From Ylistrum balloti (lineage: Eukaryota), in NCBI RefSeq assembly GCF_031769215.1, contig NW_026782268.1:2046001-2110000 (forward strand): a stretch of 64,000 nt of DNA, given 5' to 3'. Position numbers and translations under genes: made by a program. The notes under the pieces were generated by a model that saw only the letters and a list, made by a program, of their open reading frames with translations, was not told the origin of the DNA and did not search any database. Positions 29,659 through 60,951 of this stretch are shown piece by piece (the stretch's first letter is position 1; each line of letters opens with the position of its first letter).

Positions 29659-29819
29659 AAAGTTAAAAGAAGAAATATATTACCCAACACATTTGCCTCC
29701 TTTTATCGTATAATTCTCAAACCTACTTTCCTTTTGAAATTGTTTGACTAAAATATTTGCCTTTTCACCATTAGATTTGCACTCTGCATCTCTTCCAAAA
29801 ATAGGCATTTAACCTAGGG

Positions 29820-31792: not shown

Positions 31793-33079
31793 ATGGCCTC
31801 CTTGTTACTTCTACTCTCTATGTCATTGACAACCATTTGCGGAGCTACTCATGTAGATTTGAAAAAACTTCACCGAGATTTGATGGAAAATTATAACAAA
31901 AACTTACGTCCGACGTTTAACCTCTCACAGCCGACAGAAGTGGATATTCAGTTTTATCTGCTCTCGATAAAAGAATTCGACGAAAAGACCAGCAGATTTG
32001 CTATTGTTGGCGTATTTGTACTAAATTGGAACGACTTTCAGTTGGCATGGGATCCTGATGATTATGGTGGCATTGTAAGTACTGTTTTTCCACAGAACAC
32101 TTTATGGAAACCAGATCTTATACTTATGAATCCATATGAGAAAGTTGAATCTGCCGGCTTTGAGGATCTGAAAATTGTTGTGATTAATAATGGATCTGTT
32201 TTTTGGGCTCCGGTTGACGTTTATGAAGTCACGTGTCCAGCAGATGTAACGTACTATCCGTTTGATCAGCAAACGTGTTCGTTGTTTTTTAGTGTCTATA
32301 TGTATACAGTGTTTGATGTTACTTTGAAACCATCATCAACTCACATATTCACCGATGATTATTCGCCAAACAGTCTTTGGTACTTGAAAGACACAAGCTT
32401 TACAATCATTGAATCACATAACTCACAAACACTGTTGATGAAGACAATGCTTCAGAGAGGACCATTGTTTCAAGTCATAAACACTATAGTACCATTCAAT
32501 ATGTTGGGACTATTGAACATCATGGTGTTCCTTCTTCCTGCCGAATCTGGTGAACGTGTTGGTTTTTCCGTGACGATTCTGTTAGCTATTGCTGTGTTTA
32601 TGACAATTGTGGCGGACACTTTGCCTGGAACCAGCGAACCTTCTTTCCCTCGACTATGTTATTTATTGATAGCACAGTTAGGTGTCAATATGCTTGTGAC
32701 AGTTTTCACTATCTTAATATCAAGACTGCATCATAAACCAAAACAGCAAAATATTCCTTCATGGCTACAAAAAATCATAGGCAAATGTGTTTGTTTCCAT
32801 CCAAAATTCAAATTAATAAATTCAAATGAAAACATCAACAACCAAGATCTTAATAACCCGAACATCGATAGTTTAGAAACTGTTGTATCAATTGTTCAGG
32901 AAGCAAAGAATGTTGATTTAGGAGATGAGGTAAATCACAGACCTCGAAAAGGAGTAAAACACACGTGTAGTAAAATGTCATGGCAGACAGTGGTGAGCTT
33001 TCTCGATGTCTTTTCTTTTCTTTTCTTTCTTGTCATTTATGTATCAAGCATGATAGCCACTTACTTTGTGTTCTGTTAA
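31793..33079 (+). CDS. Intronless divergent nicotinic-type Cys-loop channel subunit, gene 1 (non-alpha)
   Basis: Signal peptide starts MASLLLLLSM (ATG 31793 in aaacATGG; the ORF-track start at 31715 is an upstream extension). WKPD, Cys-loop CPADVTYYPFDQQTC (C-x13-C), M1-M3, M2 GERVGFSVTILLAIAVFMTIVAD, C-terminal M4; no vicinal CC. Confidence 0.93.
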   Translation: MASLLLLLSMSLTTICGATHVDLKKLHRDLMENYNKNLRPTFNLSQPTEVDIQFYLLSIKEFDEKTSRFAIVGVFVLNWNDFQLAWDPDDYGGIVSTVFPQNTLWKPDLILMNPYEKVESAGFEDLKIVVINNGSVFWAPVDVYEVTCPADVTYYPFDQQTCSLFFSVYMYTVFDVTLKPSSTHIFTDDYSPNSLWYLKDTSFTIIESHNSQTLLMKTMLQRGPLFQVINTIVPFNMLGLLNIMVFLLPAESGERVGFSVTILLAIAVFMTIVADTLPGTSEPSFPRLCYLLIAQLGVNMLVTVFTILISRLHHKPKQQNIPSWLQKIIGKCVCFHPKFKLINSNENINNQDLNNPNIDSLETVVSIVQEAKNVDLGDEVNHRPRKGVKHTCSKMSWQTVVSFLDVFSFLFFLVIYVSSMIATYFVFC

Positions 33080-33299
33080 ATTACACTGCACATGTGTATA
33101 TCTTTTCGAAAACATATTTTTGTTTCATCAATTGACATGAGGCTAAATGATGCCAAATGGATGGTAATTGTGAAGTGAATCAATTTCAAAATTTGATGTT
33201 GATCATTCCTAAATTTTTTGACACCAAAATGTTCATTGATGAATTTCGTGTTAAGTGTAAGTTGATATTTTAAGATATGTCATTCAGTTTACCCGAACA

Positions 33300-33960
33300 A
33301 ATCACGAACCTTTGCTAAACAGAGAATTTCACAAAAATTTAGACTTCGGTCAACGCAGGGACGTTGCTACCCAGGAAATGGAAAATCGCATTAAGGATAT
33401 TGAAATCATAACGCTTATCATACAGCCATACTAAAAGCTGCCGTGTTGGTATTGGTATAGGAAAAGATCGAGATAAGCAGCTGATGTAGAAGATAAAAAA
33501 TCTGGTGGATATAAATGTACATGTATAGGATGGACGTGCTCAATAAATGCTAATTTTTTTTAACTATTTAAAGACAAGATGTCTTCGATATATCTGAAAG
33601 TGAAATCAAAGGACCTTTCAAGGTCTTAATGGCCTGTTTTGATAGGCTCTTCGATATATTCAGCGTCGTATGAAAAAAAAAAAAAACCAAGGGTACAGTT
33701 AGTTCCTATATGTATGCCGATAGTCTGTAGAGAGATCTTGTCACTAAAATATTTATAATTCTCAAATTGATTGTGATAACGTTTGTGAGAAATAATATCT
33801 GTGTTAATTTTGAAATTTTAAAAACAAAATGCAGGTTTAATTTATTTACAACTGCAATGCCTCGTATACTTTATATTACTTTCAGTCCGAAATATAAGAA
33901 AATCATCTTTAAAAAAATTGGCATTAAAACAGAGTGGAGGCATGTAAGTTTGTGATACAT
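33300..33960 (-). mobile_element. Decayed Penelope-like RT fragment
   Basis: Minus strand reads QTIGIHIGTNC (QxxGIPMGTNC-like), SFDFTFRYIEDILSL (YxDD region), SSTSAAYLDL and DKRYDF. Confidence 0.7.
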
Positions 33961-34754
33961 GTATGTCAGTTTAATTCATTGGTATTGGATTTGTTACGAA
34001 AATTAAAAAAAAAAAAAAAAAAAAAACTACAACTTTCCGTACGAACGGGTTAGGATAGTTTTTATTCTTTTATGATAAATGTATTACATGTATTTTATAA
34101 ACCACCTCAAAAGTGGATGGATGTAGAAAAAGATGCTATACAACAGGGGAATAGAACAGAACAATACATACGTAATGGAGGGCGATTCTGATTTCAGTAG
34201 TTTGTCTGGATATGCCATTATGACAATAAAATAAATTTTTCAAGACTGTTTTGTCTATAATGACAAACAGCAAGCCATCCCAACCAATCTATTCATATAA
34301 TGGATGGACTGTACAAATAAAACTCTTGGGATTTAAAAAAATTCTTGATGAAAAAGGTTACCTTGTGAAATCAATATGGTGTTTAGAACAGTTCACCGTC
34401 ACTTAATATCACCTGCTTTGATGTTAAAGCCACAACAGGTTGATATTTTATTGAATAGTTGTAGTTTACAACCCAGGATAACCATTCAAATAAGAAATGA
34501 TTGACTCACTCACTCACCTACCCACTCAATCATCGGACCTTTATTCCGTTTCCTATGGGGATATCAGTTTATCAGTTTTAATGAGCGGTTATTGTTTCCT
34601 CCAAATCGATATTTTGCAATAAATCTTTATCCTATTTTTAACGTCATTTGAGCTTTAAGTGTATTGTTCCAGTTAATGCACTCAGTATTATTGCGTGGAA
34701 ATTCATTGATCAATCTTATTCTATCTAAGCCAGTTGATAGTAACACACGAAAAA

Positions 34755-36062
34755 ATGACGTTCTTTCTATTTCTTCTCTCAGCGTATTTGACAACCATTT
34801 ACGGAGCAACTCATGTAGATCTGAAAAGACTTAACCAAAACTTGATGTCAAATTACAGCAAACATTTGCGCCCGACATTTAACCTCTCTCAACCAACAGA
34901 ATTAGATGTCATTTTTCATGTTTCTTCAATAAAGGAATTTGAAGAAAAGACCAGCAGATTTTCTATGTTTGGAGTATTTATGATTTATTGGCATGACTTT
35001 CAGTTAGAATGGAATCCGGACGATTACGGTGGCATTGTAAGTACAGTTTTCCCACAGAGCTCTTTGTGGAAACCAGACCTATTACTTTTAAACCCATATG
35101 AGAAAGTTGAACCTGCTGGCTTCGACGATCTCAAGATCATTGTAAATTACAACGGATCTGTGTACTGGTCTCCAGCTAATGTTTATGAGGTCACGTGTCC
35201 AGCAGATGTAACATATTATCCGTTTGATCAGCAAACATGTCCGTTGTATTTTGGTGTCTACATGTATACCATTTTTGATGTGACTTTGAAACCATTATCT
35301 TCTGGTATAACAACTATTTATTATTTCCCAAACAGTGTCTGGCACTTGGTAAATGTAAGCTCTAGTATTCATCCATCACTTGACACGGAAATACTCATCC
35401 TGACAATAGTACTTCAACGACGATCAATGTTTCAAGTCATAAACACTATAGTACCATTCAGTATGTTGGGACTGTTGAACATCATGGTGTTCCTTCTTCC
35501 TGCCGAATCTGGTGAACGTGTTGGTTTTTCCGTGACGATTCTGTTAGCTATTGCTGTGTTTATGACAATTGTGGCGGACACTTTGCCTGGAACCAGCGAA
35601 CCTTCTTTCCCTCGACTATGTTATTTATTGATAGCCGAACTCTTTATCAATACGTTGGTTACGATTTCTACCATTTTGTTACTAAGACTACATCACAAAC
35701 CCAAGCAACAGACCATTCCAACTTGGTTGCAATATCTCATATGTTTTTGTTTTAAAACTAAAAACAAGACCCAACCTATAGAGGAAGACATCCAAGGTAT
35801 TAGCAATGAAGATAACTTCATAATTAAAACCATTGTACCCAAGGTTCAGGAAACAAAGACAGATAAAGGAGTAAGGAAGGATTCTGATTTGAACGGAGAT
35901 GACACAATTAACGGGAAATGCCCTATCTGTAGAGGAAAAAAATATGTTTGTAATGAGTCGTCATGGCAGACTTTGGCGAGCTTTCTCGATATCTTTTTCT
36001 TTCTGTTGTTTCTTGTCTTCTTTGTTTCATGTAAGGTTGTAGCTTATTTTGTATATATTTAA
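34755..36062 (+). CDS. Intronless divergent nicotinic-type Cys-loop channel subunit, gene 2
   Basis: First ATG at 34755 (MTFFLFLLSAYLTTIYG signal peptide); Cys-loop CPADVTYYPFDQQTC; four TM segments; M2 identical to gene 1. Confidence 0.93.
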   Translation: MTFFLFLLSAYLTTIYGATHVDLKRLNQNLMSNYSKHLRPTFNLSQPTELDVIFHVSSIKEFEEKTSRFSMFGVFMIYWHDFQLEWNPDDYGGIVSTVFPQSSLWKPDLLLLNPYEKVEPAGFDDLKIIVNYNGSVYWSPANVYEVTCPADVTYYPFDQQTCPLYFGVYMYTIFDVTLKPLSSGITTIYYFPNSVWHLVNVSSSIHPSLDTEILILTIVLQRRSMFQVINTIVPFSMLGLLNIMVFLLPAESGERVGFSVTILLAIAVFMTIVADTLPGTSEPSFPRLCYLLIAELFINTLVTISTILLLRLHHKPKQQTIPTWLQYLICFCFKTKNKTQPIEEDIQGISNEDNFIIKTIVPKVQETKTDKGVRKDSDLNGDDTINGKCPICRGKKYVCNESSWQTLASFLDIFFFLLFLVFFVSCKVVAYFVYI

Positions 36063-36319
36063 GATATTCTAGGCGTATTAATATTTTGTATGGAAAAGAT
36101 TGTTTTATCCTATGTAGACGTCAGGTTATTCATACTGACTATGAAGATCAATAGTATTCTCGCTTTTCACACTAGATACTAAGCACCTCAATATGTTTTA
36201 TATTATTTGAGTATAAATCATTTGACACTGGTAAAACAGATGTTACGAATATGAAGTCTGTCATAGAAAACTGTGGGGAACAATTGAAATGAATGGAAAA
36301 ATATTCCAGAAAAAATGAT

Positions 36320-36321
<2 letters not shown>

Positions 36322-36364
<43 letters not shown>
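36322..36364. repeat. (AC)n microsatellite, ~21 units
   Basis: Directly visible. Confidence 0.98.
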
Positions 36365-36367
<3 letters not shown>

Positions 36368-38149: not shown

Positions 38150-38480
38150 GCTAGAGATGGAAAAATGCGTGGTAAACCTGATATTCAAGACACGCTTTCG
38201 ATTGCTTATCAAACAGCTATATTGGAAAGTTGTCCATGTTTGTTTCGTTGTATTTAGAAGCGTCTGTCATGTTCTTGATTACCAATTCTGGTGGATATAT
38301 ACAATGAACATTGTCAATAATTCGCCTGTTATTTAGAGACAAGACGTCATTAGTCCATCTGAAAGTGAAATTAAACGACTTTGCAAGGTCATTTTGTGAC
38401 CTTTCCGAATATGCTCTTTTATAAATTCAGACATGTATGAAAACAAAATAGGACAGCCAACAGAGGGACCTTGTTAGCAT
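38150..38480 (-). mobile_element. Decayed Penelope-like RT fragment
   Basis: atctgaaagtgaaattaaacgactttgcaag is the reverse complement of the sequence encoding AKSFNFTFR at ~53900; VPLLAVLF corresponds to the APLLADLF motif. Confidence 0.65.
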
Positions 38481-39160
38481 CGCTGTAGAAAAAATTGCAC
38501 AAAGATTTGTTTGAACAGTTTGAGTTGGCAATCTACATGATTGTAATAATTTATAAGTATAAGTATTTCATGCTTTTGATTTTTCTCTGTCATGCTAGAC
38601 AGTTTGTTACAGTAAAGTTGTTATTAAGCGTTTCCACTATAAATATACATGGCAATGAGTGATAGAGCCACACATGACGTATTATGTAATAATGATATAT
38701 TTTAGCTGGTGAGATTTTTATGTCATTTTATAATTATTATTTAATGAAGTGACAATTGTAAAATAAATTTAAGGTAAAATGCACTTAATATACAATACAA
38801 ATGCTACCAGCAATGACCAAATTAATTATTTACACGATTGTAATTAAGTAAAGAAAACAAAGGCAAACAAATGCTGCTACATATGGGAATTATCGTTAGG
38901 CAGATACGAGTTTCGCATCGATCAGAGCAGGTGACTTCAATACAAGTTAATGTGACGTACATCACATTCACAGCAATGGTTTCTGCCGGGTGTTTATGTT
39001 TTTGATAATTTAGTGTTAGAGATAAATGACAGGCAAACACTGTGTGGATCTGACAAACTGATTCTCTAAGAAAAGCATTTTTCAGTAAACGCAAGTTATT
39101 CTACTACAGGAACGCGATAAATATGTCTGGAAATCAGGAGGTATCAATGTAATAAGGAAA

Positions 39161-40462
39161 ATGGCATCCGTGTTATTTCTTCTCTGTATGTCATTGACAA
39201 CCATTTACGGAGCCACTCATGTAGATCTGAAAAGACTTCACCAAAACTTGATGTCAAATTACAGCAAACATTTGCGCCCGACATTTAACCTCTCTCAACC
39301 AACAGAATTAAATGTCATTTTTCATGTTACTTCAATAAAGGAATTTGAAGAAAAGACCAGCAGATTTTCTATGTTTGGAGTATTTATGATTTATTGGCAT
39401 GACTTTCAGTTGGAATGGAATCCGGACGATTACGGTGGCATTGTAAGTACAGTTTTCCCACAGAGCTCTTTGTGGAAACCAGACCTATTACTTTTAAACC
39501 CATATGAGAAAGTTGAACCTGCTGGCTTCGACGATCTCAAGATCATTGTAAATTACAACGGATCTGTGTACTGGTCTCCAGCTAATGTTTATGAGGTCAC
39601 GTGTCCAGCAGATGTTACATATTATCCGTTTGATCAGCAAACTTGTGCGTTGTATTTTGGTGTCTACATGTATACCATTTTTGATGTGACGTTGAAACCA
39701 TTATCCTCTGGTATAACAACTATTTATTATTTCCCAAACAGTGTCTGGCACTTGGTAAATGTAAGCTCTAGTATTCATCCATCACTTGACACGGAAATAC
39801 TCATCCTGACAATAGTACTTCAACGACGATCAATGTTTCAAGTCATAAACACTATAGTACCATTCAGTATGTTGGGACTGTTGAACATCATGGTGTTCCT
39901 TCTTCCTGCCGAATCTGGTGAACGTGTTGGTTTTTCCGTGACGATTCTGTTAGCTATTGCTGTGTTTATGACAATTGTGGCGGACACTTTGCCTGGAACC
40001 AGCGAACCTTCTTTCCCTCGACTATGTTATTTATTGATAGCCGAACTCTTCATCAATATGTTGGTTACGATTTCTACCATTTTGTTACTAAGACTACATC
40101 ACAAACCCAAGCAACAGACCATTCCATCTTGGTTACAATATCTAATGAGTAATTGTGTTTGTTTTAAAACCAAAACCGAAATAGAAAATGTAGAGGAAAA
40201 TCCAAAATACACCAATGATGTTACCAATGTAAACAACATTGTTATTGAAACAGAGGAAATAGACATCAGATTGGAGAACGATTATGATTTAAAGGGAGAC
40301 GACACAAAAACCGGATACTGCCTTGCTTGTAGAAAAAGGAAATATGTTTGTAATGAGCCGTCATGGCAGACTTTGGCGAGCTTTCTCGATGGCTTTTTCT
40401 TTCTGTTTTTTCTTGTTTTATTCGTTGCATGTAATATTGCAGCTTATTTTGTTTACGTTTAG
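39161..40462 (+). CDS. Intronless divergent nicotinic-type Cys-loop channel subunit, gene 3
   Basis: 433-aa ORF with signal peptide, Cys-loop and four TM segments; 933 nt are colinear with gene 2 at offset 4406. Confidence 0.94.
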   Translation: MASVLFLLCMSLTTIYGATHVDLKRLHQNLMSNYSKHLRPTFNLSQPTELNVIFHVTSIKEFEEKTSRFSMFGVFMIYWHDFQLEWNPDDYGGIVSTVFPQSSLWKPDLLLLNPYEKVEPAGFDDLKIIVNYNGSVYWSPANVYEVTCPADVTYYPFDQQTCALYFGVYMYTIFDVTLKPLSSGITTIYYFPNSVWHLVNVSSSIHPSLDTEILILTIVLQRRSMFQVINTIVPFSMLGLLNIMVFLLPAESGERVGFSVTILLAIAVFMTIVADTLPGTSEPSFPRLCYLLIAELFINMLVTISTILLLRLHHKPKQQTIPSWLQYLMSNCVCFKTKTEIENVEENPKYTNDVTNVNNIVIETEEIDIRLENDYDLKGDDTKTGYCLACRKRKYVCNEPSWQTLASFLDGFFFLFFLVLFVACNIAAYFVYV

Positions 40463-45320: not shown

Positions 45321-46670
45321 TCAAATAGAATCAGATATCGAGTTGTTAGCTTGAGAAAATACAAAATAGGCGACTATCTTGAGTGAACCAAAACAGATGA
45401 AGAACATCACAAATAAAAAGACATCGAGGAATTTTGCAAAACTCCGCCATGATGTTTTATCACAAAACTGTTTTCTTTTTGTTTCAGTCATCTGGTTATC
45501 TTGTACCGTAATATTGTTCCATTTATGGTCGTTTTCACTTTTTGTAATACTCCTCTCTGCATCATGATTCTTTGACGTAATGTTATCAATAGAAATGATG
45601 GCTTGATTGTTCAAATCTTTCTTCATGTTTATTTCCGTGGCATTTTCAATTTTCCGATTGCGATGGGAGCAAATACATTTGCATATGGCATAATTCAGCC
45701 ATAGAGGAACTGTCTGGTGATCGGGTTTATAATGCAATCTTAGGACTAAGATGGTAGAAATTGTCACAAGAGCATTGACGCAGAGTTCAGTTGTCAGTAT
45801 ATAAAACAGTCGAGGAAAAGAAGGCTCGCTTGTTACTGGTAGAGTGTCTGCTACAATTGTCATAAACACAGCTACAGCTAGCAAGACAGTGACAGAAAAT
45901 CCAACTCGTTCACCAGATTCAAATGGCAAAAGAAAAACCATGATGTTTAAAAGTCCAAGAATGCTAAAAGGTACTATGGTATTTATTATTTGAAACATCG
46001 GTCGACGTTGTAAAAACATTGTTACCACAAATGTTTGGCTTTCCAATTCAGTAACAACAGACATATTAGCATTTGTTACGTCCCAAAGGCTGTTTGGATA
46101 ATAATAGTCTAAAATCATGTTCGTTGGCATTGATTCAAGGAATACATCAGATACAGTCATCATGAACGCAGAGAAATATAAGGAACACATTTGTCGATCA
46201 AATGGATAAAACTTAACATCAGCTGGACATGTGACCTCAAATACATCGGGGGGTACCCAAAGCATAGTCCCATAATAATTCACTGTGATTCTTAGGCTGT
46301 CGTATCCTGGAGGCTCAATTTTATCGTATGGGTTTAATAATATCATGTCAGGTGTCCAAAGAAGACTCTGGCGGATAAATATTTGTTCAATACCACCAAA
46401 TTCATCTGGATTCCACTTCATTCGGAAATCAATCCAGGAAAATATAAACATTCCAACAATGGCAAACTTACTTGTCTTTTCGTCGAATTCTTTCAAAGAC
46501 AAAATCTGAAAGCCGACATACACTCTTGTTGGCTGTGAGAGATCTGACGTGGGACGTAACTCCTTATTATAGTTTGACGTCAACGTTTGGTAAAGTCTGG
46601 TCAAGTTTTCATGTGTTGTCCCATATGTCGTTGTAGTGGAAACGGCGAGAAGCAAAAGTAGCCACATCAT
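45321..46670 (-). CDS. Intronless divergent nicotinic-type Cys-loop channel subunit, gene 4 (inverted)
   Basis: 449 aa; signal peptide MMWLLLLLAVS, WTPD, Cys-loop CPADVKFYPFDRQMC, M2 GERVGFSVTVLLAVAVFMTIVAD. Confidence 0.94.
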   Translation of the reverse strand: MMWLLLLLAVSTTTTYGTTHENLTRLYQTLTSNYNKELRPTSDLSQPTRVYVGFQILSLKEFDEKTSKFAIVGMFIFSWIDFRMKWNPDEFGGIEQIFIRQSLLWTPDMILLNPYDKIEPPGYDSLRITVNYYGTMLWVPPDVFEVTCPADVKFYPFDRQMCSLYFSAFMMTVSDVFLESMPTNMILDYYYPNSLWDVTNANMSVVTELESQTFVVTMFLQRRPMFQIINTIVPFSILGLLNIMVFLLPFESGERVGFSVTVLLAVAVFMTIVADTLPVTSEPSFPRLFYILTTELCVNALVTISTILVLRLHYKPDHQTVPLWLNYAICKCICSHRNRKIENATEINMKKDLNNQAIISIDNITSKNHDAERSITKSENDHKWNNITVQDNQMTETKRKQFCDKTSWRSFAKFLDVFLFVMFFICFGSLKIVAYFVFSQANNSISDSI

Positions 46671-47780: not shown

Positions 47781-48680
47781 TTGTTATCTTCACTGAGCGA
47801 CGTATGAAACAAAAATGTTGTAGCTACAATTACTTGCGTATATTTCAGTGACAAACGAAGTTACACCACGGTTCTGTGGCTTCAATCCCAAACAAAAGTG
47901 GACAATGGGTTTTAACCTTCTTTCATTAAAGGCGCTTATATGAAATTCAAGCAAATTTTCTTTAGTTGGAGCATTTTCATTGAACTGGCATGATTTTCGA
48001 TTGTTATGGGATACTGATAATAAGATTTTGAATTGAGTATGTGTTTTTTCAGAGCATTTATAATGTCACATGATAAACACCTTACCAGGAACCAGTGAGC
48101 ATCATTCCTTCGGTTGTGTGACCTATTGACAGTAGGGCTCTGTGTCAATATGTTTGAAAAACTGTGCCATTTTGGTATAAAACTACATCATTAACCAAAA
48201 CATCATACCATTCCGTCATGTCTGCTAAACATGATATGCAAATGCAGCTGTTGTAAAAACTCAAAACCGAAATAAGAAGCATTAAGGAATATCACATGAA
48301 CAAAGACAATCTAGGTTTCGTTTGTTTGGAAGCCTTGGCAATCAAGCCTCAGGAAGCTGAGAAAACTGACATGGAACAATGATATTATCGTCAATTTAAA
48401 CAGTATGACTCAAACAAGCAGAACATGCTATACAAGCAAAACATCATGGCATAATGTGGCAAAGTTTCTCGATATCTTCCTCCTTGTTTTCTTCCAGGTG
48501 ATAATCGGATGTAACAAAACAATGGCTTATTTCGTATTTACTTCAAATAATCAAATATGTGTGAAGTGAATCTTGTAGATTGAGTCTTTCCTATTTCAGA
48601 AAGATACCTTATGATTAATGTTTAGATAATAATAAAGACGCTGGTAAAACCAAGCATTGCCGTTATGATATGTTTTTGCA
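47781..48680 (+). pseudogene. Internally deleted receptor pseudogene, paralogue of gene 5
   Basis: Aligns to gene 5 from the 5' end (gaaacaaaaATGTTGTAG versus ATGTTGTGG, a nonsense change at codon 3) through ECD start, M3, loop and M4 (tatttacttcaaataa) to the 3' UTR aataaagacgctggtaaa. It carries frameshifts and two large deletions. Confidence 0.88.
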
Positions 48681-51172: not shown

Positions 51173-51758
51173 TTAAAGAAAGTAGGGAAAGCATTAACCG
51201 CGTTTCGTAGTTTAAATCAAACATATATTTACTAAAATATCTCAATTGATGAAATGTCAAAATGTTTTTGTTAATATCCTGAAAACCCTTCATTTAGTTA
51301 CATTTATTTGTAATAGGGTTTTGTCATTACTGCAGTATCCTATATAGGCATATCGCTATTCTTGAGTCGATTTAGCAATAAGAATTGAGATAAACAGAAT
51401 TCAAACTAAAACAGAATTATATCAAGAAAATTATCACCAACGAAATATCTTTATGTTTAAACATGAACATTAACAATAAAACATTTTTTAGACATTTTTG
51501 TTTAAGAAATGTAAATGTTACAATCATATACAAATAACGTATGAAAATACCAGATATTTTTTGTTCTAAAGTGTCATGTCAAATAGATTTATGAAAAATA
51601 TCAACTTCGATAATAAGCTAGCTAGTTTATGTGTATCATATCGAGATTACACATCCATTTGACAAACAACGAACTACATTTAATTCATTCCCTATCAAAC
51701 CACAGGCATCTCTACATATTGATTTGTTAAAGCAATGCCAATCTTCTGCGATCAGGCA

Positions 51759-51786
51759 TTTGTCATGTTTTAGCCAATGAGATCAT
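51759..51786 (+). promoter_or_regulatory. CCAAT-box element shared with receptor gene 1
   Basis: atttgtcatgttttagccaatgagatca versus gene 1 atttgccaaggttttagccaatgaggtca; the core ends 102 nt before ATG 51883. Confidence 0.6.
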
Positions 51787-51882
51787 AGGTATCATTTATA
51801 AATTTGATTATATCTATATAGAAATACATCGATAGGACAGGTTTACATAGGCAAGCGTTGGAAACAGTGTTATGTCATCTAC

Positions 51883-53217
51883 ATGACATCCGAAACAAAA
51901 ATGTTGTGGTTACTAGTGCTTGCGTATATTTCTGTGTCAAACGCAGCTACACATGAGGATTACAGATTGCTTCACCAAACATTGATGACAAACTATACCA
52001 AAGTACTGCGTCCGACGTTTAACTCGTCCATTCCAACGACAGTGGACATTGGATTTTATCTTCTCTCGTTAAAGGAATTTGAAGAGAAGTCAAGCAAATT
52101 TTCTGTTGTTGGAGCGTTTTCAATGACCTGGCATGATTTTCAATTGGTATGGAATCCTGATAATTATGGTGGAATTGAATATACATTTTTTCCGCAGAGC
52201 TCTTTGTGGAAACCTGACATCCTTCTTGTGAATCCTTATGAGAAACTTCAATCTCCCGGTTTTGACGATCTAAAGATCTTAGTTCGGAAAGATGGAATCG
52301 TGAATTGGTCTCCACCTGACATTTATGATGTCACATGTCCATCAGATGTAACATATTATCCTTTTGATCAGCAAATATGTTCATTGCATTTCGCAGTATA
52401 TATGCATACCACATATGAAGTCTTTTTAGAGCCAAGGTCTCCTTACATTAATTTAGACTATTATTCACCCAACAGTCTTTGGGATGTGAAAAACGCCAAT
52501 TTGATTGTTGATCCTGTCTTCACAACACAAACGCTGATACTGGAAACCGTACTGCAGAGAAGACCAATGTTTCAAGTTATAAATACGATAGTACCGTTCA
52601 GTATTTTAGGATTGTTGAATATAATGGTGTTCCTTCTTCCTGCCGAGTCTGGGGAACGTGTTGGCTTTTCCGTGACTGTTCTTTTGGCTGTTGCCGTGTT
52701 TATGACCATTGTGGCCGACACTTTGCCGGGAACCAGCGAACCTTCTTTCCCTCGGTTGTGTTATCTATTGACAGCAGAGCTCTGTGTCAATACCTTTGTG
52801 ACAATTTGTACCATTTTGGTCTCGAGACTGCATCATAAACCAAAGCACCATACCATTCCATCATGGCTGCAAAACATGATATGTAAAGGTGGCTGTTTTA
52901 AAACTAAAACAGACCTAAGTAGTATCGATAAAAAACACACTGAACAGGATCTGAACAATGGAGACATCGTTTGTTTGGGTGACTCTTCGACAAAAACTCG
53001 GAAAGCTGAGAAAACTGACACAGGATATGAAAAGGATTATGAATGGAACAGTGATAGTATTGTCAATGGAAACAGTGTCACTCAAAAATGTTTTAAAAGC
53101 AACACGTCATGGCATACTGTGGCAAATTTTCTCGATATTTTCTTCTTTGTTACATTTCTAGTAATTTCCGCATGTAACAAAATAGTGGCTTATTTTGTAT
53201 TTACTTCAAATAAATAA
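51883..53217 (+). CDS. Intronless divergent nicotinic-type Cys-loop channel subunit, gene 5
   Basis: 444 aa (alternative start 51901); signal peptide, Cys-loop CPSDVTYYPFDQQIC, four TM segments; AATAAA at 53267-53272. Confidence 0.94.
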   Translation: MTSETKMLWLLVLAYISVSNAATHEDYRLLHQTLMTNYTKVLRPTFNSSIPTTVDIGFYLLSLKEFEEKSSKFSVVGAFSMTWHDFQLVWNPDNYGGIEYTFFPQSSLWKPDILLVNPYEKLQSPGFDDLKILVRKDGIVNWSPPDIYDVTCPSDVTYYPFDQQICSLHFAVYMHTTYEVFLEPRSPYINLDYYSPNSLWDVKNANLIVDPVFTTQTLILETVLQRRPMFQVINTIVPFSILGLLNIMVFLLPAESGERVGFSVTVLLAVAVFMTIVADTLPGTSEPSFPRLCYLLTAELCVNTFVTICTILVSRLHHKPKHHTIPSWLQNMICKGGCFKTKTDLSSIDKKHTEQDLNNGDIVCLGDSSTKTRKAEKTDTGYEKDYEWNSDSIVNGNSVTQKCFKSNTSWHTVANFLDIFFFVTFLVISACNKIVAYFVFTSNK

Positions 53218-53449
53218 TATGTAGATTAAGTCGAACTACTAAAAACATGTAATATAATATTATCATAATAAAGACGCTGGTAAAAACAAATATTGAAGTT
53301 GTTATATGTTTTTACATGATATTTCATGTTTTTTAATACATTTAACGCATTTACGAATAAGAATGAAAGAAAGAAAAAAAAAGAAAGAAAGAAAAAAGGG
53401 AAACAATAAGTATATCATGAAATCACGAAGACGTTGGTTTTAGTTGTCA

Positions 53450-54722
53450 TTTTGTTATACAATCAAGTTTCGGAAATGAATGGTAACTCATGTACCTGCA
53501 TAATTTCAGATTGTTTGGCGTTCCAATAAGCTGTGATTTCTTTTCATACGGGATATTGTTTCTTCGAAGCTGAAAGAAAGCCTTCGTTTTCTTGTTATCG
53601 GAGCTTTCTTTCCGAAGAAAGTTGAACGGTGGTACAAAAAAAATGGTTGTGAACTTACTACTGGAGTGTATTTCGTTAAAGATAAAGTTAAAGTAGAAAT
53701 ATAGGGATTACGAAATAATGAAAATGATCAAGTTTCTTGTTGACAACATCTTCGTCGAGTTTCTTGGTAAGATCTTCCAACAGACTCTTTGTATACCTAT
53801 GGGGATTAGAGCCCTCTCTGCTCGCAGACCTGTTTCCTTTTTTTCATTAGAGGCTGAATTGATGGAAGAGCTTACCAGAACAGACCACAAACATCTTGCA
53901 AAGTCGTTTAATTTCACTTTCAGATATAATGATGACGTCTTAACTTTAAACAACAAGGAATGTATTGACCACGCCCGTTATATAACCAACCAGAATCGGA
54001 AATCAAAGACAGGCTCTTCTACATCAGCCACTTATCCCGATATATTTCTACAACGAAACCAACCACGACAGTTTTCCACCAAGCTGTAAGATAAGCGTGT
54101 TGATTTCAATTAACGTACTGTTGTATTTTCCATTTCCGGATGGCAACATACCTGAATCCCCAACCTATGGTGTTCACATGTCGCAGCTGATTCAATATTC
54201 AAGGGGCTTTTCCCATTATTACGATTTATCTTGCAGGAAGACATCAAATGACGGATACAGGGGACACAAGGACCTTTTGATGACTATATAATTCAATGTA
54301 TAAAGGATATTATAAAAATGTTGTATCTGTATCAATGTATATATACATAGTATAGTGTGTATAATGTGTGAGAGTTATCGCCTTTATTTTCTATATTAAT
54401 TATTTTGTGTTATTTTCATTTCAATATTGTGGAGAAAATGTCTATAGGCTTTGCCTGTTATTCAATCCACACTGACATTAACATTTTTTGTCAATAAAGT
54501 TTGTTGAAATGAAATGAAGTAAAATGAATTGACGGACACACTCAGAGTTTCAAATGATGCAGGATGATGAAAATTATAATGATCACATTTATAAATCTAC
54601 CATTTCTTTGTGCGAAATGAAGCTGGACGTGTTTGATTCTCGTTAGAAGCGCCAGACGTTTACTCTTCTGGAACAATTGGTTGTCGATGAAGCAGAAGAC
54701 GCTTACTCTTCCGGGAACACTT
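53450..54722 (+). mobile_element. Penelope-like retroelement relic: RT core, thumb and 3' tail
   Basis: KMIKFLVDNIFVEF..FQQTLCIPMG, SFNFTFRYNDDVLTLNN (YxDD), FPFPDGNIPESPTYGVHMSQLIQYSR; tail motif tandemly duplicated at ~54646-54675 and 54683-54720. Confidence 0.8.
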
Positions 54723-54989
54723 AGTTTTATTCTGCTTGTTTATATTTTAATAGTTCTCTTCTTCTTACCAAATCAGGTGGATATACTAACGTTTAATATC
54801 TGCTCTCTTTCCACTCATTAGTTGTATGAAGAAATCGATCTGATATGGGTTATTCAGATGAAAATGTTCTTATGGGATTTTAAATAATGGCTACAAAATA
54901 AGTAATACTGATCAGTAACGGTACGACCTAGTGATTCGTCGGACGTATTATAGTAGTAAATTTATAACTAAATGAGAATCGACACAAAA

Positions 54990-55240
54990 ATGATGTGGCT
55001 ACTGTTTCTTAGTTCTATTTCCCAAACTGCACACGTAGCAACACGAGAGGACTTGACAAAAATTTTGATGGAAAAGTATACCATGGATTTTCATTCAACA
55101 TTCAACTTCTTACAGTCAACAATAGTTTTGGTTTTCAGCTCCTCTCATTGAAGAAATAAGCAGGCAAATTGCAGTTGTATGATGTATATTCATATTGGCA
55201 TGACTTTAAAATGTAAAGGATTCCTGGAAAATTATGAAAT
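54990..55240 (+). pseudogene. 5' remnant of a receptor pseudogene
   Basis: ATG 54990 reads MMWLLFLSSISQTAHVATREDLTK (compare gene 4 MMWLLL..TTHENLTR); shifted frames then give GFQLLSLKK and WHDFKM. Weaker homology may extend to ~55510. Confidence 0.7.
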
Positions 55241-57649
55241 CACTCATTCATGACTAGGTATAATACACAAATAAGAATTGATGACATCATAGCTGTGGTG
55301 TATACAGTGTAATTTCAAGGAAATAGAAAGTAAGAAAGTGTGTGCCATGACGTACAAACCTTTTAGTTTGAGTGAGGTTGATATTAGTAACTACTATATC
55401 TCTGTTCATTCACAATTCCTCCCCATCCCTATTCCCTTTGAGTTCCGATTCTTATTAACAATAAACACAATACAACCAGATCGTTCAATGTATAGGCTAT
55501 TATTACATCTCTTATACTGCTTTGGGTGTAAGAAGAATAACACGTGCATTTAATACATGCAACCAAATTGTAATGTATTCGTGCTAGGATTTGTGATTCC
55601 GTTCTTAGTTCTAAAATGGTAAAAATTGTTACAAGTACATTAACACAAAAGTTCCGCTACCAACAGGCAATTTATTCAAGTGATTCGACATCTTAGTTTA
55701 CTTCATAGTTGTTATCAAGTGAAATGATTTTTTGAAATCAGTACTACACACAATAAACATTTCAAAGCTATATATGGATGTATATCGGGTATTGTTGTGC
55801 TATGTTCCATCAATCTATACATTCTCAAAATTTCACCTGTAGCCAATTAGCAAGTTCACACATAAGTAACGGTTTTGAGTACATACTAATTAAATTTTTT
55901 CTGTCAATTTTCCTCAGTCACACGTCATTGATTTATCCTAAATTCAATCATAAACTCATTATCTGAACAACGTGTTCTAATGTTGTAATATCTGTTTATT
56001 TATATCGTATTATATAATTGCAAATTTGCGAGGTTGTTACAAAGATAAGAAAGAAATGCATTATATCATATAAAGAGTTTTTACATCTAGATATTTCTTA
56101 AATATCCGGAGTTCCATTGGTACAGTCGAATAGGAAGGATTTTTTCATTGATTAATATGTTAAATTTCATGCCAATGAACAGTAACAGTATATTGATCAA
56201 ATCTATTTACATAGTTAAGTCAAGCGTTTGGATTTTCTCTTTGTATGCCTATGTTCCAAAGTTAATCGATAATGACTTACTGTTCAAACAGATATGACGT
56301 GAAATCGATATTTCAATAGCGAATCACAGCTATAGTGTTTTCTGACACCTGACACGTTTCAAGCTATATTTGCCTTTTAGCGTAATTACCTTTCCAATAT
56401 CTACCAGATTCTACAGAAACATTAAAAAAAACCCATCCATTCATGATATTGACATATGCTTAGACTGCTTTGCTTTCTTTCCTTCTTCCGCTCAGGATAA
56501 CAACACTAAAGTATCATTTAAGTGCTATGTATGGTTAAAACACCTACAAAATTCAAAACTGTTTTTGAAGGTACAATGTACTTGTTCTTGGGTTTTAAAG
56601 ATTTTCTTAGAGGTGCCTGGCAGATCATTCCATTATTTCAAAATGATTATTGACCAACGTGTTGACTGAAGAATAAGGTTAGTCAGCTGATAACATTAAT
56701 AAGTGTTACATAGATAAACAGTATTAATGTTATCATTACTGATCTCCGTAGTCTTCACTGGTGCATGTTGCTTCATTATCAATAACTAATGACATAGCGA
56801 ATAAATCGATTTTTTAAATTGATGAATATCATCTTTAATTTAATTCTCTTTAAATAAAAACAGAGCTGGCCATTTTGATTTTGATATCACCTCATCATAC
56901 ATCGACTTCATCACTGCATTTTTATTTTTAAGACATATCGAAAAAATGGTGTAGCTATCGCACTTACTATTCGTTTCAATTTTTGCCATAATGCTCCACG
57001 AATATATAGTTTAAAGAATAAATATTGTTTATAAGATATGACTGCCATGTTTATTCATATATCAACATGGACAAGGATTTAACGACATATCAATAAAAAT
57101 TACTTTAATAGAAGTCATAAAAGGACAAAAACAGCTGCATGATGCGGTCTTACTCATTGTTTGGCTCTAATGTATCCAACTCAAAATTGTCTTAAAAGTG
57201 CTGTTTATTCGTGTGTCCTTTGTATAATAATCTAAAACTAAAAAAAAAACATTCATACAGTTTACAAACATTTTTTTCATACCCCTATGAAACTAAAAAA
57301 ATGACATCAATGCTTAAATGAAAATGTCACTATAAGGTATTGCCAGCATGCTTCTTGCACAATTCTTATGCCGTCGTCTCATACCATTGAAAGGAAATTT
57401 GTCAAGTCTCAGAGGCAGTAACACTTACGTGAAGACAAGGTAAGAAACACTGCGTCAGACTCCGTGGCACTGCTGCACCACATGGCTGCAATGGCCATGT
57501 TGATTCTGTTTGACATTTTGCAAGTCCTCAATAAAGTATTTCTGACGTTATGGCTATTTTCACTCCTCAAATTAGAAGTAACAATTACAATAAATCTAGC
57601 ACATATATAGCCACATTTGAAGAGAAACCATTTGATGTCCATCCTTTAC

Positions 57650-58140
57650 GCTTCCTCTTCCTTTGTAACAAAACTTTCAAGTAGATTCAGCTAATACTGT
57701 TTCGGATGACGCAAACTATCTTGGAGACTTAGGGATAGTTGCATCTCGCCAATTTAAGTAAGTTGAGTTTTGAAATAAGCCAAAGGGGATGCTATTAACA
57801 TCGGCAATATTTTACACCAGAAATCAGTTCAGGCTAATATCGAACCATATTTTCAAGAAAGGAACACCCCTAATTTCCTACAGTTACTTTCAGCACATTG
57901 CAGCCAAACTTTTCAACTACAAACAAACACTGCAACAACTGAATGTAGATGACCTCAGGACTACCCCTCCGTCAGTTTGTTCTTGTTCTACATCTACTTA
58001 AAGCGAAGGTGTAACCTCTGACATAGCACCTGGCGATTTAAGCATTATCCAAAATGATAAGCTGTGAAAACTTTTCATGATGGGGCCTAATATTGCGAAA
58101 ATCCCGTATAGAAAACTAAACAAAATGGAAGTTTTGGTCA
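57650..58140 (+). mobile_element. Penelope-like element, N-terminal ORF remnant
   Basis: PLISYSY..IAAKLFNYKQTLQ..CSCSTS..GDLSIIQNDKL..GP matches the pre-RT region I recognise from this mollusc RT-element type; assignment is from memory. Confidence 0.55.
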
Positions 58141-59604
58141 AGTTGATTCTGAAATTAAACATACGAAAATTGTGTTTACATGTGTGAAAGGATGCACAAA
58201 TTCGTAGATGTGTAAAATGTTTGCATGCCTGTGTGTGTATATGTGAACAAGTATACATATTTGTATGAGAATGATAAAAGTAATATCATGATACTTTTTC
58301 CAATTCTTTACCTGATGCCAGCAGGTTCATGGAGCTTTGATGCATGAAATCAAAGTTCGTTTATCTGTAAAATGTATTTTGTACAGGTGTGTTTCATTGT
58401 CTTAATGTATTTGTTTATTGCATATTGCTGCCGTTGTTTTACTGTACAATGTGCAAATATTTAATGTATAGGGTCTCAATTGGTGAATAAAATGTTTAAT
58501 TTACAATCATATGCACACTTTCTCCTCATAATATTGAAATAATGATATTTATAGTGTGAAGAAATGAAAATGAATTTACGAACGAAAAGAAAGAGACCTA
58601 CTGCGTGAGATACCATGATGTAAGGAAGGGAAGATAAACTAAGGGTCCCGACCTTGGCATCCCTCAAAATAGTTCTTGAAGAGAAATTAAGAAAAAGATA
58701 TTTGAATACCACTATATTTTGTAGAAGGATAGTCGTCTTTTGCTTCACAGACGATGTCACGTTATCATAATGAGAGCCAAGTAATTAACAATAACTAGGA
58801 ATGCTAACTAATACAGAGAAACGCTTAATTGCATGTCGTATACGCAAAATAATATTTTCTGACGAGATTTGAAAAACAGTGATTATCTTGTGATTGTAGA
58901 GGTAAGGCATGAACTCCCCTTACTTAATAAGGGACATGCGTAATGTACGAAGAGAAGAATATCATATAATGTAATGGTTATTACGACTAGTATACAAAAG
59001 AACCTTTGAATGATTTTAGATATTCGGTAAATGGAAGAATATTAATGTTGTTGAAAGAAAAAGCTATTGATAGTTCCTGTTTTAAAGATAAGTTATCTAA
59101 ACGGTGAACTGAATGATCATCGCATAATTCATAATTCCTGAAGACCTCGCAATACGTAACGCAAAATGAACGCCTTGTCAGAGCTATGTGTGATGTTTAT
59201 ATTGTAATATAAAGTCTCAGGAACATGGGGACACTAACACTATCAAAGAACGAACAATCAATTAACTTCAATATGGTACAATTAAATGTATCTGGTGGTC
59301 CGGATGTTTCCAGTGTACACAACAATTCCATAAAGATGTATAGATGTCCAATGTGTCACTACATCTACTGATCTGCATACAGAGAAATAAAGCTGGTAAA
59401 TACAAATGTTACATATAATCACTAGACAACGACTTAATAGAGTGTTATTCAACTTTGGATAGGCATTGATTTAGCTTGATTACAGTCAAGTCAAACACAC
59501 CTCGATTTCATTGGGCATCGGTAAATATCGATTTAATCTATCTGGTTTTATAACAAACCATAAAAGCATAAGCAGTGACAACAATTTCACTGCTATATCC
59601 AGAG

Positions 59605-60951
59605 ATGAAGGAAGCTACATGTATATCGACTCTCACGTTGATGTTCCTTTTGACGGGTTCTGGCGATGCAGCAACGCACACAGATATGGTCAAACTCCAT
59701 GAGAACTTGACGAAACATTACAACAAGTATGTCAGGCCAACTTTTAATCAGTCAGAGCCAACAATTGTTAATGTCAATTTCAACCTTCTTTCTATCAAAG
59801 AACTGGATGAAAAGACCAATAAATTGGCTATAGTAGGAATTTTTACATACTCATGGAATGACTTTCAACTCCAGTGGAATTACACGGATTTTGGCAACAG
59901 TATTACAACATTTCTGCCTCAGACGGCAGTGTGGAAACCCGACGTTATACAAGTTAACCCATATGATGAAATTGAACCTCTCGGTTATGACAGACAAACA
60001 ATTCGGGTCGTATACAACGGAGATATGTACTGGGCCCCAGCAAATGTCTACCAGTCTAGTTGTGCTATTGATGTGACGTTTTATCCCTTTGATGTCCAAT
60101 CTTGTTTCATAATGTTTAGCTCTTTGATGTACGATATATCGGAGTTACGTTTCGAAAGCAATAATACTATGCTAGACCTTTCATACTTCTACTCAAATGG
60201 CTTGTGGGAGGTCAAGGCAACAGGAATACATTGTGACAAGTCATCACCGCTTATTATTTTAATATTGCAACTAAAAAGGCGATCAATATTCCATGTTCTT
60301 AACACGTTGATACCTATCAGTGTCATAGGACTTTTGAATGTCTTGGTATTCTTGCTCCCTGCAGAGTCAGGAGAGCGTGTCAGCTTCTCGATTACTGTAT
60401 TATTAGCAATGGCTGTGTTTATCAGTATTGTGACGGACAGTCTACCCAGTAACAGTGAGCCGAATGTCCCGTTTCTGTGTTACCTTCTTGCAATCGATCT
60501 AGGCGCGAATGCTTTAGTAACCGTTTGCGCCATTCTTGGATTGCGTCTCCATCACAAACCAGACTCTCAGAAGGTCCCCAAATGGCTGAAGAGACTAATG
60601 TCCTGCCGTCCAAGCATTAAAAAGAAGAGCAGGTGTACCGATACACGCTTAGAATCTGACAATAGCATGGAGAGTTGGAATAATTCTTCTCCAGAACAGA
60701 TTAAACACATTTACTTTAATGAATCTGCAATTTCCCGGCCAAGTGAAAAAACATTCAAATACGAGCAACAAGATGTCAATGACACTGATCAAAAGACTGT
60801 GTTATCTACTCAGGAACCCTCTAAAAACATTACATGGAAAAATGTCGCAGTGGTCTTGGACATTGTTTTCTTCGTGTTATTTTTAATGGTTTTACTTGCT
60901 AAAGATGTTGTGGCAGTAATTATATTTTTGCAATCACAAAACTATTCTTAA
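59605..60951 (+). CDS. Intronless divergent nicotinic-type Cys-loop channel subunit, gene 6 (most divergent)
   Basis: First ATG 59605 (the track start 59575 is GTG); signal peptide ends GDA|ATH; WKPD; Cys-loop CAIDVTFYPFDVQSC; M2 GERVSFSITVLLAMAVFISIVTD; M4 present. Confidence 0.93.
   Translation: MKEATCISTLTLMFLLTGSGDAATHTDMVKLHENLTKHYNKYVRPTFNQSEPTIVNVNFNLLSIKELDEKTNKLAIVGIFTYSWNDFQLQWNYTDFGNSITTFLPQTAVWKPDVIQVNPYDEIEPLGYDRQTIRVVYNGDMYWAPANVYQSSCAIDVTFYPFDVQSCFIMFSSLMYDISELRFESNNTMLDLSYFYSNGLWEVKATGIHCDKSSPLIILILQLKRRSIFHVLNTLIPISVIGLLNVLVFLLPAESGERVSFSITVLLAMAVFISIVTDSLPSNSEPNVPFLCYLLAIDLGANALVTVCAILGLRLHHKPDSQKVPKWLKRLMSCRPSIKKKSRCTDTRLESDNSMESWNNSSPEQIKHIYFNESAISRPSEKTFKYEQQDVNDTDQKTVLSTQEPSKNITWKNVAVVLDIVFFVLFLMVLLAKDVVAVIIFLQSQNYS

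What the first reader, a model, noticed from the sequence alone, without database searches (positions are those of the whole stretch)
31793..60951. Tandem array of intronless, acetylcholine-blind nicotinic-type channels: candidate bivalve chemoreceptor family
Seen: six intact single-exon Cys-loop genes and two pseudogenes within 29 kb, with conserved pores and divergent ligand-binding faces. Established: nAChR-like genes are greatly expanded in bivalves, partly as intronless tandem copies, and cephalopod chemotactile receptors are intronless, clustered nAChR derivatives that lost ACh-binding residues and detect environmental compounds. Inference: this locus is a parallel or related sensory repertoire undergoing birth-and-death evolution, and these subunits are probably uncharacterised.
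Basis: partly seen in the sequence, partly recalled or inferred. Interest (0 to 1): 0.85.

Follow-up and report, generated by a model that had tools for sequence, protein, structure and literature searches.

The report
Scallop orphan nicotinic-like channel gene array
Six intact single-exon scallop genes and two dead fragments encode nicotinic-receptor-like ion channel subunits that lack the usual acetylcholine pocket, but this kind of array is already described in bivalves and a taste or smell role remains untested.

Summary
The only six ORFs of 150 aa or more in the 64-kb window are single-exon Cys-loop genes (Pfam LBD plus TM domains), with two decayed fragments between them.

All six keep a cation-type pore (-1' Glu, 9' Leu). 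All have lost the acetylcholine aromatic box and the loop C Cys pair, and loop C is six residues shorter than in alpha7.

The genome is a scallop, probably Ylistrum balloti. The array is syntenic with single-exon arrays beside a choline kinase gene in Pecten maximus and on one chromosome of Argopecten irradians, so it is old.

Selection is purifying throughout: omega is 0.28 in pocket loops, 0.20 in the rest of the LBD and 0.09 in M1-M3. Gene conversion homogenises the pore of g1-g3 and nearly all of g2/g3, whose pocket loops are identical.

No RNA data were available, and cephalopod chemotactile receptors could not be put in a tree. They do not rank among the best solved-structure matches.

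Jiao et al. 2019 already described intronless tandem nAChR arrays with degenerate binding sites in bivalves. Earlier follow-ups in this scan reached the same verdict on other arrays of this genome.

Verdict: a new member of a known kind. The chemoreceptor idea is possible but unsupported.

The parts
31793..33079 (+). g1, single-exon Cys-loop subunit, 428 aa
   Evidence: ORF. Pfam PF02931 and PF02932. Identical to database protein P0003.
34755..36062 (+). g2, single-exon Cys-loop subunit, 435 aa
   Evidence: 97-100% nucleotide identity to g3 from aa ~25 to ~325, then 58-75% in the cytoplasmic loop.
39161..40462 (+). g3, single-exon Cys-loop subunit, 433 aa
   Evidence: Best PDB match is human alpha7, 172 bits. 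AlphaFold model pLDDT 88.3. Foldseek top hits are nAChR chains.
45321..46670 (-). g4, single-exon Cys-loop subunit, 449 aa, the only copy on the minus strand
   Evidence: Groups with Pecten P0004 and Argopecten P0011/P0012 in the tree, SH-aLRT 99.
47800..48560 (+). psi1, decayed g5-like copy with an internal deletion (about aa 95-283), stops and frameshifts
   Evidence: tblastn, profile search of six-frame pieces, three-frame reading.
51883..53217 (+). g5, single-exon Cys-loop subunit, 444 aa (438 aa from the ATG at 51901)
   Evidence: The database call P0006 uses the later start.
54972..55148 (+). psi2, N-terminal remnant of about 50 codons ending in a stop
55519..55653 (-). possible inverted M3-like remnant belonging to psi2 (weak)
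   Evidence: Profile hit, E 0.005, to model positions 295-341. Contains a stop.
59605..60951 (+). g6, single-exon Cys-loop subunit, 448 aa, the most divergent (41% identity to g1)
   Evidence: Sister to Argopecten P0017, SH-aLRT 99. P0017 lies next to the g4-type gene P0011 in Argopecten.
32513..32674 (+). gene-conversion tract: a 161-nt run identical in g1, g2 and g3, covering the end of M1, M2 and the start of M3 (g1 aa 241-294; nucleotide coordinates approximate)
   Evidence: Sliding-window identity and longest identical runs. dS in M1-M3 is 0.21-0.23 against 0.84-0.87 in the LBD.
15394..25082 (-). neighbouring multi-exon choline/ethanolamine kinase gene, used as a synteny anchor; not part of the family
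   Evidence: Pfam Choline_kinase on the exon at 21618-21902, E 2.7e-17. Further exon-like frames. The exon 1 peptide matches the Pecten locus L004 beside its array at 61% identity.

Best explanation
This locus is part of a larger, old, syntenic tandem cluster of single-exon nicotinic-receptor-like genes. They belong to the bivalve-wide expansion of this family.

Each gene encodes a complete subunit of a pentameric cation channel: signal peptide, Cys-loop, four transmembrane helices, -1' Glu, 9' Leu gate and 20' Asp. These features are shown.

No subunit can supply either face of a classical acetylcholine site. The equivalents of W55, Y93, Y188, C190/C191 and Y195 are gone, W149 is replaced by Y, F or L, and loop C is six residues shorter. 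This is also shown.

The proteins are in use, because every domain, including the pocket loops, is under purifying selection.

Inferred: the subunits assemble into channels gated at a remodelled pocket, more open and largely hydrophobic or aromatic, by something other than acetylcholine acting in the canonical way. Whether that ligand is endogenous or environmental is unresolved.

The array evolves by occasional duplication and decay combined with gene conversion. Conversion keeps the pore of g1-g3, and nearly all of g2/g3, identical.
For: - Six intact ORFs with both Pfam domains.
- Alignment to human alpha7, with fixed spacing from invariant landmarks, gives the pocket substitutions and the preserved pore residues.
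- Confident nAChR-fold model.
- Pairwise omega is 0.11-0.25 in the LBD and 0.04-0.38 in M1-M3.
- ML codon omega over 17 genes of three scallops is 0.28 in pocket loops, 0.20 in the rest of the LBD and 0.09 in M1-M3.
- g1-g5 fall in a pectinid-only clade of 15 sequences (SH-aLRT 100). g4 and g6 have Pecten and/or Argopecten partners.
- Pecten maximus and Argopecten irradians hold single-exon arrays of close relatives, and the Pecten array lies beside choline kinase as in the window.
- Gene-conversion tracts.
- Pseudogene fragments occur here and in Argopecten.
- The published description of such arrays in bivalves is PMC6896357.
Against: - No expression evidence of any kind. No RNA run holds the locus, and the only holder is a DNA run.
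- Whether the subunits form channels alone or together, and whether they respond to ACh through a non-canonical site or through partner subunits, cannot be read from sequence.
- Tyr at the W149 position could still give a cation-pi contact.
- Average omega values do not exclude a few positively selected pocket sites.
Confidence: 0.6

Rival explanations
1. Environmental ionotropic chemoreceptors. The subunits are expressed in exposed sensory tissue such as mantle tentacles, gill or palps, and detect external, perhaps poorly soluble, compounds. This would be a parallel to cephalopod chemotactile receptors.
For: - They share the gross features of chemotactile receptors: nAChR-derived, intronless, clustered, ACh-site residues lost (PMC9068888; PMC11526382).
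- Pocket loops, especially C, D and F, vary more than the rest of the LBD.
- In bivalves many expanded nAChR genes are highest in gill (PMC6896357).
- No bivalve chemoreceptor repertoire is established, so the niche is open (PMC11682238).
Against: - No expression data.
- Pocket-loop omega is 0.28, not above 1, and 0.25 in pairwise comparison.
- g2 and g3 have identical pocket loops, and gene conversion homogenises LBDs.
- The array is an old syntenic block with orthologues across genera.
- Chemotactile receptor chains are not among the best 60 PDB sequence matches.
- Every named hit down to E about 1e-40 is a bivalve protein.
- The short loop C without the Cys pair is shared by the whole bivalve set retrieved, 56 sequences, so it is not a special feature of this locus.
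Confidence: 0.15
2. Non-binding accessory or structural subunits. They co-assemble with canonical alpha-type subunits encoded elsewhere and tune the conductance, trafficking or desensitisation of receptors that are still gated by acetylcholine. Vertebrate muscle beta1 and neuronal alpha5/beta3 do this in the non-binding positions.
For: - Both faces of the ACh site are lost, while the Cys-loop, pre-M1 Arg, M2 and the M2-M3 linker are strongly conserved.
- The pore is held identical among g1-g3 by gene conversion.
- Purifying selection acts across the LBD, as expected for assembly interfaces.
- g2 and g3 differ mainly in the cytoplasmic loop, the part that governs trafficking and regulation.
Against: - Dozens to hundreds of such subunits per bivalve genome (PMC6896357) is far more than accessory roles usually need.
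- No partner is identified.
- Pocket loops still evolve faster than the rest of the LBD.
Confidence: 0.2
3. Largely silent retrogene-derived copies on their way to pseudogenisation, with no current function.
For: - Two decayed copies lie in the array.
- Jiao et al. report that more intron-poor than intron-rich nAChR genes have low or no expression.
- The close Pecten and Argopecten relatives are each recorded on a single genome contig, with no transcript-sized contigs in the protein collection. This evidence is weak.
Against: - Six full-length ORFs of about 440 codons are intact in DNA of about 34% G+C.
- Omega is 0.09-0.28.
- Orthologous intact copies exist in other genera.
Confidence: 0.05

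Closest known systems
Bivalve intronless, tandemly arrayed nAChR expansion (Jiao et al. 2019, BMC Genomics, PMC6896357)
   Same: - Bivalve host.
- Single-exon coding sequences in tandem arrays of 2-12 genes.
- Lineage-specific duplication with degenerate members.
- Most members are non-alpha, with incomplete ACh-binding residues.
   Different: That study covered oysters, a pearl oyster, mussels and the scallop Mizuhopecten. This locus, its Ylistrum/Pecten/Argopecten synteny beside choline kinase, and its gene-conversion tracts were not described there.
Cephalopod chemotactile receptors (CRT1, CRB1; van Giesen 2020, Allard 2023, Kang 2023, as summarised in PMC11526382 and PMC9068888)
   Same: - Derived from nAChR-like ancestors.
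- Cation channels.
- Clustered genes.
- ACh-binding residues lost.
   Different: - Chemotactile receptors are a predominantly cephalopod clade (PMC13174522), expressed in suckers, with diversifying selection in the pocket and known hydrophobic agonists.
- Here the nearest relatives are all bivalve, pocket loops are under purifying selection, and expression and ligands are unknown.
- Chemotactile receptor chains do not rank among the best 60 PDB matches.
'CR-like' and other divergent molluscan nAChR clades with pocket substitutions (MolluscaGenes preprint, PMC13174522)
   Same: Molluscan nAChR-superfamily clades, bivalves included, with substitutions at ACh-coordinating positions.
   Different: Whether the window's clade falls in their 'CR-like' clade or in another, such as AChRB or Cys-less, could not be tested.
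Alpo4, an orphan lophotrochozoan nAChR-like receptor of Alvinella pompejana (eLife 2023, PMC10338036)
   Same: - Lophotrochozoan nAChR-like subunit.
- No loop C Cys pair.
- No response to known transmitters, so an orphan.
   Different: Alpo4 keeps the aromatic residues (F103, W159, Y199, Y205, W65). The scallop subunits have lost them and have a shorter loop C.
Vertebrate alpha7 nAChR
   Same: - Best solved-structure sequence match, 172 bits and about 30% identity.
- Same fold, Cys-loop and cation-selective M2.
   Different: All alpha7 agonist-contact aromatics and the C190/C191 pair are absent. The cytoplasmic loop is much shorter, and the gene has no introns in its coding sequence.

Membership tests
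Cys-loop pentameric ligand-gated ion channel superfamily | Neur_chan_LBD plus Neur_chan_memb domains | tested here: met
   All six: PF02931 at E 1e-41 to 1e-43, and PF02932 above the gathering score.
Cys-loop pentameric ligand-gated ion channel superfamily | Cys-loop of two cysteines 13 residues apart with the FPFD-type core; four transmembrane helices | tested here: met
   C148 and C162 are invariant, with YPFD between them. The model shows helices M1-M4.
Cation-selective nAChR/5-HT3 branch | M2 with -1' Glu, 9' Leu and an outer ring of charge; best matches to nAChR | tested here: met
   The M2 region reads PAESGER...LLA...VAD in alignment with alpha7. The best PDB sequences and folds are nAChR subunits.
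Alpha-type (agonist-binding principal) nAChR subunit | Vicinal Cys pair in loop C, plus Y93, W149, Y188 and Y195 | tested here: not met
   There is no Cys pair. Loop C is 6 residues shorter. Y93 is L, M or V, W149 is Y, F or L, and Y188 and Y195 are absent.
Canonical non-alpha (complementary-face) nAChR subunit | Loop D Trp (W55) and loop E residues that complete the ACh site | tested here: not met
   W55 is V, M, A or I in all six. The equivalents of L109, Q117 and L119 are variable.
Bivalve intronless tandem nAChR expansion (Jiao et al. 2019) | Bivalve genome; coding sequence without introns; tandem array; relatives in lineage-specific clades | tested here: met
   - Scallop origin.
- Uninterrupted ORFs.
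- Six genes in 29 kb.
- Pectinid-only clade.
- Single-exon arrays in Pecten and Argopecten, where gene length equals 3 x aa + 3.
Cephalopod chemotactile receptors | Membership of the chemotactile receptor clade in a phylogeny | not testable with these tools
   No chemotactile receptor sequence could be obtained. Indirect evidence: every named relative down to E about 1e-40 is a bivalve protein, and chemotactile receptor chains are not among the best 60 PDB matches.
Cephalopod chemotactile receptors | Expression in contact-chemosensory epithelium | not testable with these tools
   No RNA run holds the locus. The only run found is DNA.
Cephalopod chemotactile receptors | Diversifying selection in the ligand pocket | tested here: inconclusive
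   Pocket-loop omega is 0.28 by ML and 0.25 pairwise, so there is no domain-level signal. Site-level tests could not be run.
Cephalopod chemotactile receptors | Insensitive to ACh; gated by hydrophobic environmental compounds | not testable with these tools
   This needs electrophysiology.

The most novel reading that the evidence does not exclude
The pectinid clade that also lost the loop B tryptophan (g1-g6 and their Pecten and Argopecten relatives) is an ionotropic chemoreceptor family of scallop sensory epithelia. It would have arisen independently of cephalopod chemotactile receptors from the same nAChR stock, which would be a second recruitment of nicotinic receptors for external chemosensation within molluscs.
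Probability: 0.12. Interest if true: 0.7.

Novelty: new member of a known kind. Interest (0 to 1): 0.3.

Why it matters
Bivalves carry 100-200 nicotinic-like genes, and the function of most is unknown. If arrays like this one proved to be chemoreceptors, they would supply the missing bivalve chemosensory repertoire and a second case of transmitter receptors turned into environmental sensors.

As it stands, the locus adds a well-delimited, syntenic and experimentally tractable example: 17 or more intact orthologues and paralogues across three scallop genera. It also gives a clear case of gene conversion limited to the pore. It does not change what is known about the family.

Tried and rejected
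- **RNA evidence.** The one run found (X1) covers intergenic DNA with SNPs, so it is genomic.
- **Phylogeny with cephalopod chemotactile receptors.** No tool could bring a chemotactile receptor sequence into the session.
  - The word-indexed protein search returned only bivalve relatives and a few alpha7-like outgroups.
  - The exhaustive search returns unnamed representatives. Of ten sampled, the only two with names were bivalve proteins.
  - PDB searches show only the best 60 sequences, all vertebrate nAChR or 5-HT3A.
  - The van Giesen 2020 paper is not held.
- **Fold and feature searches.** Foldseek against the PDB confirms the nAChR fold but does not discriminate subfamilies. The ESM Atlas feature search gave only the family.
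- **Site-wise selection test.** PAML and HyPhy are not installed. Only partition-level omega was obtained.
- **Retroposition hallmarks.** Paralogue homology ends within about 10-20 bp of the coding sequence. Given a dS of 0.7 or more outside the conversion tracts, this is uninformative.
- **Rejected: assembly duplication of g2/g3.** Independent contigs of run X1 cover g2, the spacer and parts of g3, and the two genes differ strongly in the cytoplasmic loop.


Full report
**What is there**

A six-frame ORF scan finds only six ORFs of 150 aa or more in the 64-kb window, all 433-458 aa. With the likely ATG starts they are:

| Gene | Coordinates | Strand |
|---|---|---|
| g1 | 31793-33079 | + |
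| g2 | 34755-36062 | + |
| g3 | 39161-40462 | + |
| g4 | 45321-46670 | - |
| g5 | 51883-53217 | + |
| g6 | 59605-60951 | + |

- Each has a Neur_chan_LBD domain (E 1e-41 to 1e-43) and a Neur_chan_memb domain.
- Each runs uninterrupted from signal peptide through the Cys-loop and M1-M4 to the stop, so the coding sequence is a single exon.
- In DNA of about 34% G+C, six open frames of about 1.3 kb cannot arise by chance.

tblastn, a profile search of six-frame pieces and direct reading show two decayed copies:

- psi1 (47800-48560, +) is g5-like. It has a stop in the signal peptide, an internal deletion of about residues 95-283, and further stops and frameshifts.
- psi2 (54972-55148, +) keeps about 50 N-terminal codons. 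A weak inverted M3-like piece may lie at 55519-55653.

**Organism and relatives**

- The window's proteins sit on a 2.17-Mb contig that also carries two proteins named Ylistrum balloti, so the genome is a scallop, probably that species.
- The closest relatives are Pecten maximus (56-59%) and Argopecten irradians (52-63%) proteins. All other named hits down to E about 1e-40 are bivalve proteins at 43% identity or less. The first non-molluscs are alpha7-like proteins of fish and a hydroid.
- An exhaustive profile search finds 18,313 relatives at E of 0.001 or less and 2,649 at 1e-30 or less.
- In a maximum-likelihood tree of 59 proteins:
  - g1-g5 fall in a pectinid-only clade of 15 (SH-aLRT 100).
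  - g4 groups with Pecten and Argopecten sequences (99).
  - g1-g3 form a Ylistrum-only group.
  - g6 pairs with Argopecten P0017 (99).
  - A wider pectinid-only clade of 23 has support 99.

**Synteny**

- On Pecten maximus chromosome LR736847.1, at 29.159-29.203 Mb, five called Cys-loop genes lie in mixed orientation and are followed by a choline kinase gene. One of the five (the 369-aa P0015) shows a frameshift at its N-terminus. Another, more distant (a 447-aa call, 41% identical to g4), has a gene span that does not fit one exon.
- The window has a multi-exon choline kinase gene at about 15.4-25.1 kb (minus strand), reading away from the array. Its exon 1 peptide matches the Pecten locus at 61% identity.
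- On Argopecten irradians chromosome CM084271.1, at 34.37-34.42 Mb, there are at least seven single-exon copies and one N-terminal fragment. The g6 orthologue lies directly beside a g4-type gene.
- The array is therefore an old block shared by three genera, with lineage-specific additions and losses.
- Earlier notes of this scan say that a further six-gene array begins 2.1 kb beyond the window's end. I did not verify that.

**Binding site and pore**

The alignment to human alpha7 needs no gaps between invariant landmarks and the key positions.

| alpha7 residue | Landmark spacing | Residue in the array |
|---|---|---|
| Y93 | W86 + 7 | L, M or V |
| W149 | second Cys-loop Cys + 7 | Y (g1, g2, g3, g5), F (g4) or L (g6) |
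| W55 | W60 - 5 | V, M, A or I |
| Y188, C190, C191, Y195 | loop C | absent; loop C is six residues shorter |

- The pore keeps -1' Glu, 6' Thr, 9' Leu, 13' Val and 20' Asp.
- The AlphaFold model of g3 is confident (pLDDT 88.3), and its best structural matches are nAChR chains.
- Across the 56 bivalve sequences retrieved, none has the loop C Cys pair or a long loop C, and few have W55 or Y93. The loop B Trp is lost mainly in the 15-member clade and in g6 with its Argopecten partner, though a few other bivalve sequences also lack it.
- 'Acetylcholine-blind' is therefore a fair description at the level of the canonical site. It is a family-wide trait, not a peculiarity of this locus.

**Selection and mode of evolution**

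- Pairwise Nei-Gojobori omega is 0.11-0.25 for the LBD and 0.04-0.38 for M1-M3.
- Pocket loops A-F vary more than the rest of the LBD (entropy 1.44 against 1.05, p = 0.002). Their omega is still only 0.25, against 0.22 for the rest, in g1 versus g2/g3.
- A maximum-likelihood codon model over 17 genes from the three species gives omega of 0.279 (loops), 0.199 (rest of the LBD) and 0.093 (M1-M3).
- This is purifying selection with mild relaxation in the loops. It is not the diversifying pattern reported for octopus receptors. Site-level tests could not be run.
- Gene conversion is evident:
  - g1 shares a 161-nt perfectly identical run with g2 and g3 across M1-M3. dS there is 0.21-0.23, against 0.84-0.87 in the LBD.
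  - g2 and g3 are 97-100% identical from residue about 25 to about 325 (dS 0.015-0.05), but differ strongly in the signal peptide (dS 0.51), the cytoplasmic loop (0.67) and M4 (0.21).
  - Their pocket loops are identical.
- 'Birth and death' is therefore only half the story. Concerted evolution also shapes the array, and some of the pore conservation is due to it.

**Expression**

The only holder is a genomic run, whose contigs also cover the spacers. The sensory hypothesis could not be tested.

**Comparison with what is known**

- Jiao et al. 2019 (PMC6896357) reported the following:
  - Five bivalves, including a scallop, carry 99-217 nAChR genes.
  - Many are intronless and lie in tandem arrays of up to 12 genes.
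  - In C. gigas only 33 of 132 are alpha-type, and only 13 of those keep a complete principal site.
- A 2026 preprint (PMC13174522) places chemotactile receptors in a predominantly cephalopod clade. It reports a broader 'CR-like' clade that includes bivalves.
- A 2024 paper states that chemotactile receptors are known only from cephalopods and that no bivalve sensory repertoire has been characterised (PMC11682238).
- Solved chemotactile receptor and Alpo4 chains do not appear among the best 60 PDB sequence matches, for g3 or for a profile of the bivalve family. Both lists reach down to 5-HT3A.

**Verdict**

- The locus is real and well delimited, and it is a new member of a known kind.
- Most likely mechanism: functional cation-channel subunits with a remodelled pocket that canonical ACh binding cannot use. 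The ligand is unknown.
- An accessory role in ACh-gated heteromers and an environmental chemoreceptor role both remain open. The latter has no positive evidence here, and the selection pattern and age of the array mildly disfavour it.
- Earlier follow-ups of this scan on other arrays of the same genome came to the same conclusion.

Noticed in passing
window 15394-25082 (-): A multi-exon choline/ethanolamine kinase gene lies directly upstream of the array and reads away from it. Pecten maximus has the same neighbour. A choline-metabolism gene beside nicotinic-like genes is probably coincidence, but it makes a useful synteny anchor.
   Followed up: partly
window 9844-11586: A 29-bp satellite, about 60 copies, 88% matches.
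   Followed up: no
window 28616-29659: A 90-bp (45-bp sub-period) AT-rich satellite, about 11.6 copies, 94% matches. It lies 2 kb upstream of g1.
   Followed up: no
window 318-718, 33356-33679, 38252-38465, 53816-54251: Copies of an interspersed repeat at about 70% identity. The copy at 38300-38499 has word depth of about 443 in the genomic run against about 10 around it, so it is a high-copy element, probably a SINE or MITE. Several contigs break there.
   Followed up: partly
window 34752-36082 vs 39158-40482: g2/g3 homology starts 3 bp before the ATG and ends about 20 bp after the stop. The flanks are unalignable although the LBD-M3 part is nearly identical. This is a mosaic produced by gene conversion on old duplicates.
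   Followed up: yes
L004 983-2261 (Pecten maximus): The 369-aa annotated gene (P0015) has its N-terminal 54 codons in another frame just upstream. It is either a frameshifted pseudogene or a truncated annotation.
   Followed up: no
L006/L008 (Argopecten irradians chr CM084271.1, 34371268-34372575 and 34378673-34379980): Two 435-aa copies are nearly identical (branch lengths 0.05 and 0.07 in the codon tree). They are a very recent duplication or conversion within the Argopecten array.
   Followed up: no
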